Below are positions 43,717 through 64,000 of a stretch of 64,000 nucleotides of DNA, piece by piece; the stretch's first letter is position 1, and each line of letters opens with the position of its first letter. A model generated the notes under the pieces. The model had not been told where the DNA came from, did no database searches, and saw nothing but the letters and a program-made list of their open reading frames with translations. The position numbers and the translations under genes are program-made. The stretch lies in the IMG/VR virus record IMGVR_UViG_3300046660_000716, positions 124,001 to 188,000 of that record; one strand, 5' to 3'.

Positions 43717-43983
43717 ATGACAAAAACGAAGCCAACGACGTTTGTGAACGACCTCGGACCCGTAACGTGTAGCTGCTGTACAGAGCCCCGGCCGAGGGCG
43801 AAAAGCATCAAGATCAACATCGACCGCCTGCACTACAAATGGCTGTGCTCGCGCTGCTTCGCAACACAACTAAGAACACAGAAGGAATCCAATGACGCAA
43901 CAAGAGACGCCACGCCGTCCGGGCCGTCGTCCGATCCTAACGCCCGAGATCGTCGAGTCGTGCAAGGCGCGGCTTGCCGCTGA
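43717..43983 (+). CDS. Small Zn-finger-like protein
   Basis: CSCC...WLCSRC; AT-richer codons; overlaps the next ORF. Confidence 0.4.
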   Translation: MTKTKPTTFVNDLGPVTCSCCTEPRPRAKSIKINIDRLHYKWLCSRCFATQLRTQKESNDATRDATPSGPSSDPNARDRRVVQGAACR

Positions 43984-44812
43984 GAGCGCGAACGACACGA
44001 TAGCCTCGCTGGCGCGGGAGTACAACGTTCACTCCACCACGATGCGCATGGCCGTGCGCGGGACAACGTGGGCCAACCGTGACCCCGCCTCCGTGCCCGA
44101 GCCCGAGGGCATGCGACGCATCCCTGGCTACTCTGCCTACTTCGCTGACCGGCGCGGCGACATCTACTCCGCCCGCCAGAGCGACTCGCTGAAGCCGCTG
44201 GCGTTCGGTGCCTCCGGCAAGGGTAGGAAGGTCTTCCTGATCGCGGACGGGGCCGAGAAGGGTCACACCGCGCAGGTCCACGATCTCATCTGCGCCGCGT
44301 GGCACGGCCCGCGTCCGACGGACCGCCACCGCGTCCGCCACATCGACGAGGACCGCACCCACAACTCGCCGGACAATCTGGCCTGGGGCGAGCCCGGCGA
44401 GGTTCCCCGCTCCGGCGGCGGGGCCACAGGGGAGGCGCACGGCCGCTCCAAGCTGACCGACGCTGACGTGCTGCAGGTGCTGGCCTACGCGGCGGCCGGC
44501 GAGCGCCCCGCCGACATCGCGCGGCACAAGCACGTCCACCCGACGACGATCTCGGGCATCGTGGCCCGCCGTCTATGGAGCCACGTCCAGATCCCGGACG
44601 GCGGCCTGCCGGCCGTCGCCCCGCTCCCGCACGCCGACCGGCGCGTGTCCTCCGGTCAGAACCACGGCCGCGCCAAGCTCAATGACGCCGCCGTCGGCCG
44701 TATCCGCCTCAGCCTGCCCCACAAGAGCAACGCGGAGCTCGCCAAGGAGGAGAAGGTCCACCCGACCACCATCGCAAGGATCCGCTCGGGCCGCGGCTGG
44801 AGGGCGCCGTGA
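43892..44812 (+). CDS. HNH homing endonuclease with HTH repeats
   Basis: IPGYSAY..DRRGDIYS, VHDLICAAWHGPRP, VRHIDEDRTHNSPDNLAW and repeated G..H.R.KL...V / VHPTTI..I HTH units. Confidence 0.8.
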   Translation: MTQQETPRRPGRRPILTPEIVESCKARLAAESANDTIASLAREYNVHSTTMRMAVRGTTWANRDPASVPEPEGMRRIPGYSAYFADRRGDIYSARQSDSLKPLAFGASGKGRKVFLIADGAEKGHTAQVHDLICAAWHGPRPTDRHRVRHIDEDRTHNSPDNLAWGEPGEVPRSGGGATGEAHGRSKLTDADVLQVLAYAAAGERPADIARHKHVHPTTISGIVARRLWSHVQIPDGGLPAVAPLPHADRRVSSGQNHGRAKLNDAAVGRIRLSLPHKSNAELAKEEKVHPTTIARIRSGRGWRAP

Positions 44813-60213: not shown

Positions 60214-60268
60214 GAAAGACCCAACGGCTCAGGCCGTTGGGTCTTCCGTAGTCAATTCCCCATCACAC

Positions 60269-60970
60269 CTAAGCGATCCACAGCCTGCGGGCCGTGGACG
60301 ACTTCAGCTGCTTGCTCTCCATCCGCTCGATGATCTCCGGCCGCTTGTCCGCCTGGGCGTTCAGCCGCTCCAGGTTCAGGTTCAGCTCGCCGAAGATCGT
60401 CTGCACGGTCTGGAAGTACTGCCGGACGCTCAAGATGTCGATGGCGATGTCCGCCAGCATCAGCTCCCTGAAGATCTCCCTGGCCCCCGGGTGGATGGTG
60501 CGGAAGTGCGTCGCGTGCACGCACTTGCACTCCACGTAGAGGTCGGAATATTGGAGGCCCTTTGGGAAAATTTCGATGATGTTGGGAGGGCGGTAGTCGA
60601 ACGTCAGGGAGAGCTCGGAAGCCGACTGGCGGTCGGCCACCAGCTGGCGGTCCAGGACGTCGCCGAACATGAGAGGATCATATGGGAAGGCGCCGAAAGC
60701 CCCAACCCCTTCACGCACACGATTCACGCCGAGAATTCGTTCGCCTTGCGGGCGGATCTGGTAGACGCCCTCGCGCTGGTCGATGCGGTCGGCCACTGTG
60801 TCAATTTTGAGATCGACCATGTACGGCAAGTAGATCGAGAACGTCGGTAGGGTCTCGGCGTCAATGCAGGCGAGTATGTCGGCGTCGTTGAAGTCGATCG
60901 GACCTGTAACCGTCTGCCCTAAGAAGGACCTACAGCGGTTCGTAACCCACGTCGCGTCGATTATGGACAT
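60269..60970 (-). CDS. Putative neck/head-completion protein
   Basis: ETLPTFSIYLPY, LTFDYRPPN, FRELMLADI, GELNLNLE pattern typical of T4 gp13-like neck proteins. Confidence 0.55.
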   Translation of the reverse strand: MSIIDATWVTNRCRSFLGQTVTGPIDFNDADILACIDAETLPTFSIYLPYMVDLKIDTVADRIDQREGVYQIRPQGERILGVNRVREGVGAFGAFPYDPLMFGDVLDRQLVADRQSASELSLTFDYRPPNIIEIFPKGLQYSDLYVECKCVHATHFRTIHPGAREIFRELMLADIAIDILSVRQYFQTVQTIFGELNLNLERLNAQADKRPEIIERMESKQLKSSTARRLWIA

Positions 60971-61722
60971 TGGAATTCCTTAAAAAGGTGGTGATAGGCC
61001 GGAATATCGTTGAGACAGATCCTTCGCACTGTCACCTTATGTGGTTTGCCATTCAACAGCACAGCAATTTCGGTATACGTCTTCTTGTCAACGAAATGCA
61101 GCGTGTAGACTCTCTTTACTAGCTCGTCATCAAGAAGACGAGAGGTAGGTATCCTGGATTGCGTTTCCTGGAAGTCGCGCGGCTCATATCCTAGCGGTAC
61201 ATGCGACCAGAATTTACCCTTGTACACATCTACGACATACGATGGACTCAGGTTGAGCCTCACGGCAGCGCTGGCGGGCGTTTCGCCGTTGTGTAACGCC
61301 GTTCGGAGAGCAATTACTTCCTCGCGCGTAAGCTTTGCCCGTGGGTGGTCCTCGTCCCGTGCCAAGCGGTGTGCAAGCCGATCCGCCATGTTCTGAACCT
61401 TGGTGCCCCAGTACAAATTACTGCACACGGGGTTTGACCTAACGCCATCCTTATGGCACGCCTCCAAGATTGCGTCCGACTCTGGAAGAGGGATGAACGT
61501 GCGCGCAACCATGTTGTGCACTATAAACATGGCATCACCGCCTAATTTCAGTCGTAGACTGATATGCACATATCCAGTTGTACTAGACACATGCGTTTTC
61601 ATTTGCCTTGGCGTCGAACTACGCAGCGTGGAAAACACTTCTCCACGCCGATTGATGAAATAGCCGTCTACCAGACGATCATCGACAATTGGAAATAGTT
61701 CTGCGGTATCTTCTTCGGTCAT
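60961..61722 (-). mobile_element. Free-standing HNH homing endonuclease (low GC)
   Basis: YFINRRGEVFS, VHNMVARTFIP, ACHKDGVRSNPVCSNLYWGT; GC clearly lower than the flanks. Confidence 0.85.
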
Positions 61723-61724
61723 AC

Positions 61725-61777
61725 AATATCCTCCCCTGTGTGAATGATACCCTGTTTGTCAAACAGGAGAGGATATT
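61725..61777 (-). promoter_or_regulatory. RBS-sequestering hairpin with an internal late promoter
   Basis: 15-bp stem AAUAUCCUCUCCUGU/ACAGGGGAGGAUAUU covers GGAGG; AACA-gggtat-CA lies in the loop. Confidence 0.7.
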
Positions 61778-61779
61778 TT

Positions 61780-64000
61780 TTACTCGTTGTAGATCTCCAA
61801 GACTCGCTTCTTCAGGTCGACCAGGACTGCGTTTGACCACATCGCCAGGAAGACGTCCGACGTCATGCGGCTGACGATCGACAGCGGGCTCGTGATGTAG
61901 TCCACCTGGTTGCCTTCCTCGTCCTCCGGCTCTTCGCCGTCCTCGAACACGCGGCTGACGATGCCCTTGAGCGGGGAGCTGCACACGAACTTGTCGCCCG
62001 GCGCCGCCTCGTCCTCGACCTGGATCAGGAACTGGATCAGCACGCCGTCCACGATCTCCCCGGCCACCTTGTCCCGCGTGATGCGGATCGGGGCGTTGGC
62101 GCGCACGGGCTCGTCGGTCGGGGCTCCGGCGCCGGCCTTCTTGCGCTCGTCCGCCAGCCGCTCCTGCAGCCTGATGAACTTCTGCAGCGACGGCGACAGC
62201 TGGTCGAGGTCCTTGTTGTAGTACGTGCGGATCTCGACCACCTTGCCGGCGTACTTCGCCACGGCCACGTTGCGTGTGAGCTCGGCGATCGCGTCGTCGA
62301 ACTCCTTGCCGACCCGCGCCAGCAGCGCCGACACGTCGGCGTCGTCCGTCACGTTCTCGAACACGGCCAGCGAGTCGTTCGGCTGTACAACGGTCCCGAC
62401 CTTGGCCACGCCCTGCAGGTTGGTCTTGGCGCCCAGGCTCACGGAGCGGGCCATCGTGACCAGGGCCACGGTGTCGCGCGTCAGCTTGGAGGTCACCATC
62501 AGGCTGTCCTCGTACGTCTGGTCCAGCGCCACGATGGCGATGCGAGCCAGGATCCCGCTCTTGTAGCCGGTGGAGCCGTCGTCGCTCGCCGCGAAGTAGG
62601 ACGGGTCGTGCGCCAGGATGTCGTCCTGGGCGAACCGCTTGCCCGGCTCCACGCCGGGGTTGAGCTTGAGCTGGGCTGTGATGTAGAAGCCGCCGCCCGA
62701 GTTCTTGACCGAGCGGGGCGACATGTCCACGTAGGCCAGCTCTCCGTCGTCGTACTTGATCTTAGCCAGCTGCGCCTTCTCGTCCAGCGAGACGAACACC
62801 CCTGCTTTGCGGGCCTTGTACGCGTACGTGTTGCCGATGGCGTAGGCCAGGGCCTTCTCGGCACCGGAGCCGACCAGCTGCGGCGTGTGCTTGGCGATCG
62901 GCATGGTGTGTGTCGCCTGCTTGGACTGCATGCCGATCCGCGGAGGGTCGGCGTGCTGCGCCACGAACGGCGTGATCAGCTCCCCCAGGGCCAGGACCGA
63001 TGCGGCGTCCGTGGCGGCCAGGTCCAGGTCGAACCTGCCGCGCACGTCCTTCACCGCGGCCGAGTAGGCCAGGGTGCGCTTGACGCCGATCTCGGCCGAG
63101 TCGGGCGAGTAGTAGCCGAAGATGCCGCGCATCGACTTGTGGTACGCGCGCATGGCGCGATTCACGGTGCGTCCGTCGCTCAGGCCGCCGGCGGCGCCGG
63201 TCCACGTGGCCTTGCCGCGCAGCTCAGCCTCGAGCAGGGGGTTCAGCAGGGAGACCTCCTCGACGTTGGAGGCGGCCTGGACCTGGCGGATCACCTCGAC
63301 CGGGTTGACCATGAGCTTCTGCGGCGAGGCCGACTCGCGGGTGGCGCGCACGCGCTCCATCTCCTTGTGCAGCACCTTGTACAGCATCGAGTTGACCAGC
63401 TCCGGGCCGCGCAGGCGGTACGACGCCATGTCGTTCGACTCGGGGTGCTCGTTGCTCTCCAGCATGGCGCTGGCATACAGCAGGACGTGGGCCATGTCGG
63501 TTGGCAGGCCGTCCTCGGCCAGCAGGTCGCGGGTCATCGGGTCGATGAACGATGCCTGGTAGTTGACCAGCGCCTTGGCGTGGCCCGGGCCGCCGAGGCG
63601 GTCGGCGATGTGGTCCACCCAGCCCATGCCGGCCGGGCCGAAGTCCGACATCGGCCGGTCCTCGGTGTCCAGCTCCTTCAGGCCGTTGATCAGCAGCGAG
63701 TCGCGCAGGCGCGTCGGGGCGAACACCACCACGCCGTCCTCGAACCGGATGGCGTCGCTCTCTGCGTAGCGGCTCTTGCGGTAGGCGCCGGCGTCGACGA
63801 TGGAGAACTGCACCTGCGCCGCGCGCAGCATGTTCGTCAGGCCGATGTCGTAGCCCACGATGACGGCGGTCGGCAGGTACTGGCTCAGCATCTTGACGCG
63901 GCTGTACATGTACTTGCGCTGGAGGACGCTCGGCTCCGGGAGGTCGGCCGCCGGGGCGGCCTCGCGCACCATGTCGTAAATCAGGGCGCCGATGTCCTTG
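61780..64000 (-). CDS. RNA polymerase beta subunit, large (probably virion RNAP); 5' end lies beyond the window
   Basis: RAYHKSMRG, HADPPRIGMQSKQATH, TYEDSLMV, GDKF...LKGIVS, SPLSIVSRMT. Confidence 0.88.
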   Translation of the reverse strand, partial: KDIGALIYDMVREAAPAADLPEPSVLQRKYMYSRVKMLSQYLPTAVIVGYDIGLTNMLRAAQVQFSIVDAGAYRKSRYAESDAIRFEDGVVVFAPTRLRDSLLINGLKELDTEDRPMSDFGPAGMGWVDHIADRLGGPGHAKALVNYQASFIDPMTRDLLAEDGLPTDMAHVLLYASAMLESNEHPESNDMASYRLRGPELVNSMLYKVLHKEMERVRATRESASPQKLMVNPVEVIRQVQAASNVEEVSLLNPLLEAELRGKATWTGAAGGLSDGRTVNRAMRAYHKSMRGIFGYYSPDSAEIGVKRTLAYSAAVKDVRGRFDLDLAATDAASVLALGELITPFVAQHADPPRIGMQSKQATHTMPIAKHTPQLVGSGAEKALAYAIGNTYAYKARKAGVFVSLDEKAQLAKIKYDDGELAYVDMSPRSVKNSGGGFYITAQLKLNPGVEPGKRFAQDDILAHDPSYFAASDDGSTGYKSGILARIAIVALDQTYEDSLMVTSKLTRDTVALVTMARSVSLGAKTNLQGVAKVGTVVQPNDSLAVFENVTDDADVSALLARVGKEFDDAIAELTRNVAVAKYAGKVVEIRTYYNKDLDQLSPSLQKFIRLQERLADERKKAGAGAPTDEPVRANAPIRITRDKVAGEIVDGVLIQFLIQVEDEAAPGDKFVCSSPLKGIVSRVFEDGEEPEDEEGNQVDYITSPLSIVSRMTSDVFLAMWSNAVLVDLKKRVLEIYNE

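What the first reader, a model, noticed from the sequence alone, without database searches (positions are those of the whole stretch)
61725..61777. HNH endonuclease with a translation lock opened by a late promoter
Seen: between the RNAP beta stop and the HNH ATG lies a 15-bp stem with one G-U pair on the minus strand. Its 3' arm holds the GGAGG RBS, and an AACA-N6-CA motif lies in the loop. Read-through mRNA would hide the RBS, while a transcript starting in the loop lacks the 5' arm. Known: T4-family homing endonucleases such as I-TevI use this logic. Inference: the same control has arisen with the phage nvRNAP promoter, which independently supports the promoter motif.
Basis: partly seen in the sequence, partly recalled or inferred. 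Interest (0 to 1): 0.65.

Follow-up and report, generated by a model that had tools for sequence, protein, structure and literature searches.

The report
Hairpin-locked HNH gene with loop promoter
A mobile HNH endonuclease gene in an uncultivated GC-rich jumbo phage hides its ribosome-binding site in a conserved hairpin whose loop is a late-promoter motif of the phage's own RNA polymerase, which repeats with different parts a control already known from phage T4.

Summary
On the minus strand, 2 nt after the RNA polymerase beta stop, a 15-bp stem with one G·U pair continues through a U·C mismatch into 3 more pairs. Its 3' arm holds the GGAGG Shine-Dalgarno sequence, and its 15-nt loop holds AACAGGGTATCA.

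The stem is not chance. Only 3 such hairpins occur in the 259-kb genome (0-1 in shuffles), and the gene ranks 3rd of 312 for the cost of opening its ribosome-binding site.

The decisive evidence is comparative. Five distinct homologous HNH cassettes on metagenome contigs each carry a 15-bp stem whose 12-nt loop is exactly AACA-N6-TA. Seven of 15 stem pairs show compensatory changes, and AACA and TA never vary. A related contig without the HNH has neither hairpin nor motif.

AACA-N6-T[A/G] is also this genome's real late-promoter motif (37 intergenic sites) and matches the AR9 consensus. The genome encodes an AR9-type nvRNAP beta.

Caveats:
- The window copy has C, not T, at -1. That variant is not enriched genome-wide.
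- The upstream gene is probably the late virion RNAP beta, so timing differs from T4.
- A ribosome terminating at the beta stop could also open this copy.
- No RNA data exist.

Verdict: a real, convergent variant of the T4 I-TevI type lock.

The parts
61780..64000 (-). 3' part of the RNA polymerase beta gene. The full gene runs to window coordinate 65763 (genome 189763), outside the window. It is probably the virion RNAP beta. Stop TAA at 61782-61780.
   Evidence: phrog_14872 E = 1e-141 and PF00562. The nearest kin are beta subunits of the LPJP1, phiR1-37 and Staphylococcus S6 group. It has no hit to AR9 nvRNAP chains, whereas the genome's other beta gene hits 7S00_C at 2e-106. Start codon.
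61763..61777 (-). 5' arm of the lock hairpin, AAUAUCCUCUCCUGU. It begins 2 nt after the beta stop codon.
   Evidence: Sequence, folds, and homology to the 5' arms of the relatives.
61759..61761 (-). Inner 3-bp extension of the stem (UGA), pairing with 61741-61743 after a U·C mismatch at 61762/61740. It is a remnant of the fully paired inner stem seen in relatives (GTTGAC/GTCAAC in L003).
   Evidence: Minimum-energy folds and comparison with L003.
61744..61758 (-). Apical loop, 15 nt: CAAACAGGGUAUCAU.
61745..61756 (-). Late-promoter-like motif AACA-GGGTAT-CA. AACA would lie at -11..-8 and the predicted start is A 61745, 23 nt before the ATG. It is off-consensus at -1 (C instead of T).
   Evidence: The genome's consensus is AACA-N6-T[A/G], as in AR9 (PMC5312081). 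In AR9, changes at -1 have a smaller effect than changes elsewhere in the motif (PMC5449584). Relatives carry consensus AACA-N6-TA at the same place.
61725..61739 (-). 3' arm of the hairpin, ACAGGGGAGGAUAUU. It contains the Shine-Dalgarno GGAGG (61734-61730) and ends 2 nt before the ATG.
60961..61722 (-). HNH endonuclease gene, 253 aa, 52-53% GC against 65% for the genome. It is a free-standing mobile cassette, and its last 10 nt overlap the start of the next gene.
   Evidence: phrog_59 E = 5e-25 and PF13392 below its cut-off; GC profile; homologues at 44-47% identity in the same position on other contigs; an empty site in L006.
60269..60970 (-). Virion structural protein gene, 233 aa. It is the conserved downstream neighbour of the cassette.
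   Evidence: phrog_18911 E = 1.5e-37; 75-76% identical in relatives.
60214..60247 (-). T-tailed terminator hairpin that closes the beta-HNH-structural gene unit.

Best explanation
The 53-nt inverted repeat is the control module of a free-standing, mobile HNH endonuclease cassette. The cassette sits between the virion RNAP beta gene and a virion structural gene of an AR9/phiR1-37-related, GC-rich jumbo phage.

On RNA that reads through from the beta gene, the 5' arm pairs with the 3' arm and buries the Shine-Dalgarno GGAGG up to 2 nt before the AUG. The HNH is then not translated from the operon transcript.

The apical loop is a late promoter of the phage's non-virion RNA polymerase, with AACA at -11..-8 and the start at the last motif base. 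RNA started there begins at the loop/3'-arm boundary, cannot form the hairpin, and has an open ribosome-binding site on a 23-nt leader.

What is shown: the structure, its rarity, its conservation with covariation, the invariance of the loop motif in relatives, the identity of the genome-wide promoter motif, and the presence/absence link with the HNH.

What is inferred: that the motif fires in vivo, that the stem blocks translation, and the timing.

In the window's own copy the promoter is off-consensus (-1 C) and the stem has shifted to 2 nt from the upstream stop. This copy may fire weakly and may also be opened by ribosomes terminating on the beta gene.
For: Structure in the window:
- The stem, the G·U pair, the SD in the 3' arm and the motif in the loop are all present.
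- It is one of only 3 clean hairpins of at least 15 bp in 259 kb, against 0-1 in shuffles.
- Its ribosome-binding-site opening cost of 17 kcal/mol ranks 3rd of 312 genes.

Relatives:
- Five distinct homologous cassettes (L001, L003, L009, L011, L012) each have a 15-bp stem, a 12-nt loop that equals AACA-N6-TA, the SD in the 3' arm, and the ATG 7-8 nt after the stem.
- Covariation is clear: 98.7% of cells are paired, 7 of 15 pairs change on both sides, 0 of 500 shuffles reach the observed score, and slid registers pair only 27-48%.
- In the loop, AACA and TA are invariant while all six N positions vary.
- The hairpin travels with the HNH behind four different upstream contexts. It is absent from L006, the related contig without the HNH.

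Promoter motif:
- AACA-N6-T[A/G] has 37 sense-upstream intergenic sites in this genome, at spacing 6 only, typically 21-30 nt before the ATG. This equals the AR9 late consensus.
- The genome encodes an orthologue of an AR9 nvRNAP beta chain, 7S00_C, at 2e-106.
- None of the 37 ordinary late promoters lies in a stem of 8 bp or more, so the stem is not needed for promoter function.

Lock and release:
- Opening cost, long versus short leader, is 15.5 versus 5.3 kcal/mol in the window and 20-25 versus 4-9 in relatives.
- Wobble pairs are U·G on the sense RNA in 3 cases, against one C·A.
- Substitutions at -1 have only a smaller effect in AR9.
- CA-variant sites with a 19-31-nt leader number 4 of 11, against 8 of 70 for other non-T classes.
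Against: - No transcription start or expression data exist. The only sequencing run that holds the locus is rhizosphere metagenome DNA.
- The window's motif has C at -1. AACA-N6-CA shows no enrichment over other spacings genome-wide.
- The window's loop is enlarged and its inner stem is partly decayed, which could mean the promoter is degenerating.
- The upstream beta gene is probably late as well. The early/late contrast that gives the T4 lock its purpose is therefore not established here.
- The comparative sample is small, five distinct relatives from a few soil-type metagenomes, and they are phylogenetically related.
- An inverted repeat around a promoter would also be conserved if it were a protein operator or a DNA cruciform.
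Confidence: 0.65

Rival explanations
1. Translational coupling. The hairpin is a lock that is opened mainly by ribosomes terminating at the upstream stop codon, which melt the 5' arm. HNH synthesis is then tied to translation of the upstream gene, and the loop motif is irrelevant or decayed in this copy.
For: In the window the stop codon is only 2 nt from the stem, and the SD pairs with the outer, stop-proximal part of the 5' arm. Forcing 9-12 nt past the stop to be unpaired lowers the opening cost from 14.9 to 4.1 and 3.3 kcal/mol. The loop promoter is off-consensus here. A stop codon lies 2-7 nt upstream of the stem in all six cassettes.
Against: In the five relatives the same footprint leaves 7-16 kcal/mol, so coupling cannot explain the conserved design. 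It also does not explain the invariant AACA and TA in a loop of exactly 12 nt. The closeness of the stop follows simply from insertion into a 5-nt intergenic gap, as in the L006 empty site.
Confidence: 0.2
2. The repeat acts at the DNA level. Either it extrudes as a cruciform that presents the promoter's template strand single-stranded to an nvRNAP that reads single-stranded template DNA, or it is a palindromic operator through which the HNH protein, which has a C-terminal HTH-like region, represses its own promoter as I-TevI does.
For: AR9 nvRNAP recognises the template strand in single-stranded form and initiates specifically on single-stranded DNA (PMC5449584). The promoter is exactly the loop in five relatives. 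I-TevI autorepresses through an operator that overlaps its late promoter (PMC2988022). P0001 has a weak sigma-70 region-4 (HTH) match at residues 201-230. Symmetric covariation of the arms fits a palindromic operator as well.
Against: The 37 ordinary late promoters have no flanking stems, so no hairpin is needed for firing. The 3' arm always coincides with the SD and ends 2-8 nt before the AUG, which a DNA-level role does not require. The wobble positions are mostly U·G on the sense RNA and would be A·C on the other strand.
Confidence: 0.1
3. The hairpin is a terminator, a 3'-end stabiliser or an RNase processing site of the upstream gene, and its overlap with the HNH ribosome-binding site is incidental.
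For: It lies directly after a stop codon in all copies. The two other long clean hairpins in the genome are terminators.
Against: No T-run follows the stem in any copy. The terminator scan finds nothing there, while the genome's real terminators have small loops and T-tails. The hairpin goes with the HNH and not with the upstream gene, which differs among contigs, and it is absent from the HNH-less L006. A 15-bp stem is short for RNase III (established knowledge, not tested).
Confidence: 0.04

Closest known systems
T4-type translational control of homing endonuclease genes: I-TevI, I-TevII, I-TevIII, segB and Aeh1 mobE. The same control also acts on T4 genes e and soc.
   Same: A stable RNA hairpin sequesters the Shine-Dalgarno sequence of an endonuclease gene on long polycistronic transcripts. 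A late promoter placed so that its transcript lacks the 5' arm frees the ribosome-binding site (PMC2988022). As in T4, the gene is a free-standing cassette squeezed between conserved genes. In some relatives a promoter for the downstream gene is embedded in the endonuclease's 3' end, as in segG and gene 32.
   Different: The phage lineage is different: an AR9/phiR1-37-like jumbo phage at 65% GC. The polymerase and promoter are different: an AACA-N6-TA motif of a phage multisubunit nvRNAP, not the gp55-dependent TATAAATA read by host RNAP. The whole promoter, from -11 to +1, is the apical loop. The upstream transcript is probably late rather than early or middle. Nothing has been tested experimentally.
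AR9 nvRNAP late promoters, AACA-(6N)-T A/G, where the last base is the start
   Same: The motif and spacing are the same genome-wide, with 37 sites. The genome carries an orthologue of an AR9 nvRNAP beta chain, 7S00_C. Leaders of 21-30 nt are typical.
   Different: The window's site has C at -1. [quoted passage not shown] In AR9 no hairpin context has been described for these promoters in the papers read.
N4 virion RNAP hairpin promoters (from general knowledge, not checked here)
   Same: Promoter information lies in or around a DNA hairpin. The enzyme uses single-stranded template features.
   Different: N4 promoters are 5-7-bp stems with 3-nt loops, read by a single-subunit RNAP and requiring extrusion. 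Here ordinary promoters of the same class work without any stem, so the resemblance is probably superficial.

Membership tests
RBS-sequestering hairpin bypassed by an internal late promoter (T4 I-TevI/segB/mobE type control) | The SD and/or AUG of the endonuclease gene is paired in a stable hairpin on read-through RNA | tested here: met
   15+3-bp stem. Opening cost is 15-17 kcal/mol, rank 3 of 312 genes. It is conserved with covariation in 5 relatives.
RBS-sequestering hairpin bypassed by an internal late promoter (T4 I-TevI/segB/mobE type control) | A promoter sits so that its transcript lacks the 5' arm | tested here: inconclusive
   Relatives have consensus AACA-N6-TA that exactly fills the loop. 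The window has AACA-N6-CA, which is off-consensus at -1 and not enriched genome-wide, though -1 is a tolerant position in AR9.
RBS-sequestering hairpin bypassed by an internal late promoter (T4 I-TevI/segB/mobE type control) | A mapped transcription start inside the hairpin, and differential translation of long and short leaders | not testable with these tools
   No RNA run holds the locus. Only predicted energies are available.
RBS-sequestering hairpin bypassed by an internal late promoter (T4 I-TevI/segB/mobE type control) | The long transcript belongs to an earlier temporal class than the internal promoter | tested here: inconclusive
   The upstream gene is by exclusion the virion RNAP beta, which is expected to be late by analogy with AR9. 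Its own upstream region has only an AACA-N6-CA site 21 nt before the ATG.
AR9-type nvRNAP late promoter | AACA at -11..-8 and a purine start 6 nt plus 2 downstream | tested here: met
   AACA at 61756-61753 and A at 61745.
AR9-type nvRNAP late promoter | T at -1 | tested here: not met
   C at 61746. All 37 canonical sites have T by definition of the enriched class, and CA is at background frequency.
AR9-type nvRNAP late promoter | The cognate polymerase is encoded by the genome | tested here: met
   The ORF at genome 96677-98761 matches AR9 nvRNAP chain 7S00_C at E = 1.9e-106. A homologue of the gp226 specificity subunit was not searched for.
AR9-type nvRNAP late promoter | Uracil at template positions -11 and -10 | not testable with these tools
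   Base modification cannot be read from an assembled sequence.
Free-standing HNH homing endonuclease cassette | HNH nuclease domain | tested here: met
   phrog_59 E = 5e-25, phrog_959 E = 1e-17, and Pfam HNH_3 at 18.3 bits, below the 24.8 cut-off. The His, Asn and Cys columns are invariant in 3 homologues.
Free-standing HNH homing endonuclease cassette | Presence/absence polymorphism at one genomic site among related genomes | tested here: met
   L009 has ORF187, the hairpin-HNH and the structural gene. L006 has ORF187 and the structural gene with only a 5-nt gap. The cassette has low GC.
Free-standing HNH homing endonuclease cassette | Site-specific cleavage of the empty allele, and homing | not testable with these tools
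   Needs an enzyme assay or phage crosses.
Intrinsic terminator | GC-rich stem, small loop, and a T-run directly after the stem | tested here: not met
   The scan finds no terminator at the hairpin. The stem is followed by GTATGACC.

The most novel reading that the evidence does not exclude
The cassette may be a portable structured promoter. In a GC-rich genome the 15-bp inverted repeat would extrude, or breathe during replication, so that the template-strand TTGT...AT of the loop is offered single-stranded to an nvRNAP that natively reads single-stranded template DNA. One element would then act twice: as a DNA hairpin that switches its own promoter on, and as an RNA hairpin that keeps foreign read-through transcripts untranslatable. 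This would give a selfish endonuclease gene expression that does not depend on where it lands.
Probability: 0.1. Interest if true: 0.85.

Novelty: new variant of a known kind. Interest (0 to 1): 0.6.

Why it matters
First, the finding shows that the T4 solution for keeping a homing endonuclease quiet has arisen independently. That solution is to hide the ribosome-binding site on operon transcripts and free it on a transcript from a promoter inside the hairpin. Here it appears in a very different phage lineage that transcribes with its own non-canonical multisubunit RNA polymerase.

Second, the invariant AACA...TA in otherwise freely varying loops, on uncultivated phage contigs, is independent evolutionary evidence that the AR9-type late-promoter motif operates in GC-rich soil jumbo phages.

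Third, the 42-nt module is compact and self-contained. The arms can be redesigned at will, as nature has done, which makes it an attractive test object for nvRNAP promoter recognition on structured or single-stranded DNA. It could also serve as an insulated expression part.

Fourth, the work gives an annotated set of two promoter classes for this genome.

Tried and rejected
- Close relatives of the locus in the phage collection (megablast) and in IMG/VR were not found. The relatives came only from the protein word search plus contig look-ups.
- A sigma-70 reading of the loop (TTGACA, 7 nt, TATCAT) was rejected. The spacing is impossible and the scan is negative. TTGAC is inherited inner-stem sequence (compare L003).
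- A reading of the loop as the genome's second promoter class, ATAT[C/A]AT-N6-G, was rejected. The loop has GTATCAT-N6-A, which is wrong at both invariant ends. Of 33 intergenic TAT[C/A]AT sites, 26 obey A...G.
- A terminator reading was rejected.
- An apparent excess of AACA-N6-GA in intergenic DNA turned out to be Shine-Dalgarno regions of the form ...AAGGAGA.
- A first genome-wide hairpin count that allowed unlimited G·U pairs was uninformative, with 16 real against 6-16 in shuffles. It was replaced by the count allowing at most 1 G·U.
- The second HNH-like gene of the window (43892-44812) has no comparable leader.
- A similar lock at genome 86981-87050 was followed into three distant homologues and is not conserved there.
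- I tried to reach the upstream part of the L001 record to compare the beta-gene promoter, but the record is not held.
- RNA evidence: the only run holding the locus is DNA.
- The large representative protein search, structure prediction and complex prediction were not needed and were not run.

Full report
**Setting**

The window is bases 124001-188000 of a 259,338-bp virus record with direct terminal repeats and 65.6% GC. The only run that holds it is rhizosphere metagenome DNA.

The beta-like gene of the finding is nearest to those of Listeria phage LPJP1, Yersinia phiR1-37 and the Staphylococcus S6 group (33-35% identity). This places the phage in the AR9/PBS1-like branch of jumbo phages with two multisubunit RNA polymerases.

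A second beta gene, at genome 96677-98761, matches AR9 non-virion RNAP chain 7S00_C at E = 1.9e-106. The window's 1310-aa beta has no such match. By exclusion it is the virion RNAP beta. This is inference, not proof.

**The observation**

On the minus strand the beta gene stops at TAA 61782-61780. Two bases later the 5' arm AAUAUCCUCUCCUGU (61777-61763) begins. It pairs with ACAGGGGAGGAUAUU (61739-61725) in 15 contiguous pairs with one G·U (61768·61734).

The Shine-Dalgarno GGAGG (61734-61730) lies in the 3' arm, and the ATG of a 253-aa ORF is at 61722. AACA-GGGTAT-CA occupies 61756-61745.

The minimum-energy fold adds a U·C mismatch and 3 more pairs, which leaves a 15-nt loop. Folding gives -31.4 kcal/mol, z = -4.3.

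The ORF is an HNH endonuclease (phrog_59, E = 5e-25). Its 52-53% GC contrasts with 65% around it. Its last 10 nt overlap the start of a virion structural protein gene (60970-60269; phrog_18911). A T-tailed terminator follows at 60247-60214.

**Is it more than chance?**

With unlimited G·U pairs, 15-bp stems are as common as in shuffles. With at most one G·U, only 3 exist in the whole genome, against 0-1 in ten local shuffles. The other two are terminators.

I called 312 genes with a codon model and computed the free-energy cost of freeing the region upstream of each start. The HNH gene costs 17.0 kcal/mol, rank 3 of 312, against a median of 4.0.

**The promoter motif in this genome**

AACA followed by TA or TG is enriched in sense-upstream intergenic DNA only at a spacing of 6 nt. 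There are 17 and 20 such sites, against 0-5 at spacings 3-9. This gives 37 sites, most of them 21-30 nt before a start codon.

This is exactly the AR9 late consensus AACA-(6N)-TA/G, where the last base is the start (PMC5312081).

One weak point in its favour: 4 of 11 CA sites have a 19-31-nt leader, against 8 of 70 for the other non-T classes. One of the four lies 21 nt before the beta gene's own ATG. In AR9, substitutions at -1 have a smaller effect, while -11..-8 are essential (PMC5449584).

A second promoter class, ATAT[C/A]AT-N6-G, has 33 sites where about 2 are expected. It recalls AR9's early AAATATATATTAT-(6N)-G. The loop's GTATCAT-N6-A fails it at both invariant ends.

**Relatives decide the matter**

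The word search found five further HNH proteins at 44-47% identity. Their contigs all place the HNH directly upstream of, and overlapping, the same 233-aa structural gene, which is 75-76% identical.

The upstream neighbour differs among them:
- RNAP beta in L011 and L012;
- a 187-aa P-loop ORF in L009;
- a 121-aa ORF in L003;
- a duplicated remnant of the beta C-terminus in L001.

In every one the leader is a 15-bp stem with a 12-nt apical loop that is exactly AACA-N6-TA. The loops are AACAGATTAGTA, AACAGTTGTATA, AACATATAAGTA, AACAGAAATATA and AACAAATAAGTA. The SD sits at the 3' end of the 3' arm, and the ATG follows 7-8 nt after the stem.

On the gap-free alignment A4:
- 98.7% of cells are paired;
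- 7 of 15 pairs change on both sides;
- no shuffle of 500 reaches the covariation score;
- slid registers pair only 27-48%.

AACA and TA never vary, while all six N positions do.

Contig L006 has beta, ORF187 and the structural gene with a 5-nt gap. It has no HNH, no hairpin and no AACA motif. Hairpin and promoter therefore belong to the mobile cassette.

None of the genome's 37 ordinary late promoters lies in a stem of 8 bp or more. The stem is thus not a requirement of the promoter.

**Mechanism**

A transcript starting at the last motif base begins at the loop/3'-arm boundary. The predicted cost of opening SD to AUG falls from 15.5 to 5.3 kcal/mol in the window, and from 20-25 to 4-9 in relatives.

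This is the logic described for T4 I-TevI, I-TevII, I-TevIII, segB and Aeh1 mobE (PMC2988022). Here it is built with another polymerase's promoter.

**Peculiarities of the window's copy**

- The -1 base is C.
- The inner stem, GTTGAC/GTCAAC in L003, has decayed to 3 pairs.
- The stem has grown outward (AAUA/UAUU), to 2 nt from the beta stop and 2 nt from the AUG.
- As a result, a terminating ribosome with a 9-12-nt footprint would unlock this copy (14.9 falls to 4.1 and 3.3 kcal/mol), but not the relatives (7-16 kcal/mol remain).

I therefore hold the loop-promoter model at about 0.65 overall. It is higher for the family and about even for this copy. Translational coupling is the main rival for this copy.

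**Other rivals**

A DNA-level role is not excluded. It could be a cruciform that offers the single-stranded template to an nvRNAP that reads single-stranded DNA, or a palindromic operator for autorepression as in I-TevI. It does not explain why the 3' arm always coincides with the SD, and the wobble pairs are mostly U·G on the sense RNA.

A terminator reading fails for lack of a T-run, and because the hairpin follows the HNH rather than the upstream gene.

**Limits**

- No transcription start data exist.
- The host is unknown.
- The sample is five related sequences.
- The temporal class of the upstream gene is inferred only.
- I did not search for a gp226 homologue and cannot tell whether the DNA contains uracil.

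**Verdict**

The element is a convergent variant of a known control and is well suited to experiment.

Noticed in passing
whole genome; in the window for example 3793 (-), 4923 (-), 26153 (-), 42037 (+), 54478 (-): A catalogue of 37 candidate late promoters, AACA-N6-T[A/G], in sense-upstream intergenic DNA, mostly 21-30 nt before start codons. The motif is identical to the AR9 nvRNAP consensus although the genome has 65% GC.
   Followed up: yes
whole genome; in the window for example 8062 (+), 11422 (+), 13973 (+), 26229 (+), 38012 (+), 57415 (-): A second promoter-like class, ATAT[C/A]AT-N6-G, with 33 sites (26 intergenic, about 2 expected), usually about 40 nt before an ATG. Its N6 is pyrimidine-rich. 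It is probably the early (virion RNAP) class, by analogy with AR9's AAATATATATTAT-(6N)-G. Some sites also have a TTGA-like box 16-17 nt upstream, so host sigma-70 use is not excluded.
   Followed up: partly
outside the window: genome 86981-87050 (+), locus L007:982-1051: A second possible translation lock: a 21-bp interrupted stem (-41 kcal/mol for 111 nt, z = -5.3). Its 5' arm is an ATATCATTCTCCT promoter of the second class, with the predicted start G immediately after the arm. Its 3' arm holds the SD and the ATG of a 153-aa conserved hypothetical gene. It is not conserved in three distant homologues (L014, L016, L018).
   Followed up: partly
L001:3841-3943, L006:684-1247, L009:155-718: The junction between RNAP beta and the virion structural gene is a hot spot for cargo in related phages. 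It holds a 187-aa P-loop ORF (L006, L009), an acetyltransferase-like ORF plus a 121-aa ORF (L001), and in L001 a duplicated remnant of the beta C-terminus (...NAVLVDLKGKVAEIYRE*) directly before the HNH hairpin. The remnant suggests that flanking sequence was co-converted or duplicated.
   Followed up: partly
L001:4691-4702, L009:1464-1475, L012:1076-1087: In three relatives an AACA-N6-T[A/G] motif lies inside the 3' end of the HNH ORF, 38 nt before the structural gene's ATG. This is a possible embedded promoter for the downstream gene, as described for T4 segG and gene 32. It is absent from the window's copy, L003 and L011.
   Followed up: partly
window 43892-44812 (+): A second HNH-like ORF of 306 aa (phrog_59 matches, E = 9e-19) with genome-like GC and repeated HTH-like segments. 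It has no RBS-sequestering hairpin and overlaps an 88-aa ORF upstream.
   Followed up: partly
outside the window: genome 96677-98761 (+), locus L013:878-2962: A split beta-subunit fragment of the non-virion RNAP, orthologous to AR9 nvRNAP chain 7S00_C (E = 1.9e-106). It shows that the phage has an AR9-type late transcription machine.
   Followed up: yes
window 65784-65795 (-), just outside the window (genome 189784-189795): The only AACA motif before the virion RNAP beta gene is again the CA variant, AACAGTCCATCA, 21 nt before the likely ATG at genome 189763. It shares AACAG...ATCA with the HNH loop. It may be a weak late promoter, or chance.
   Followed up: partly
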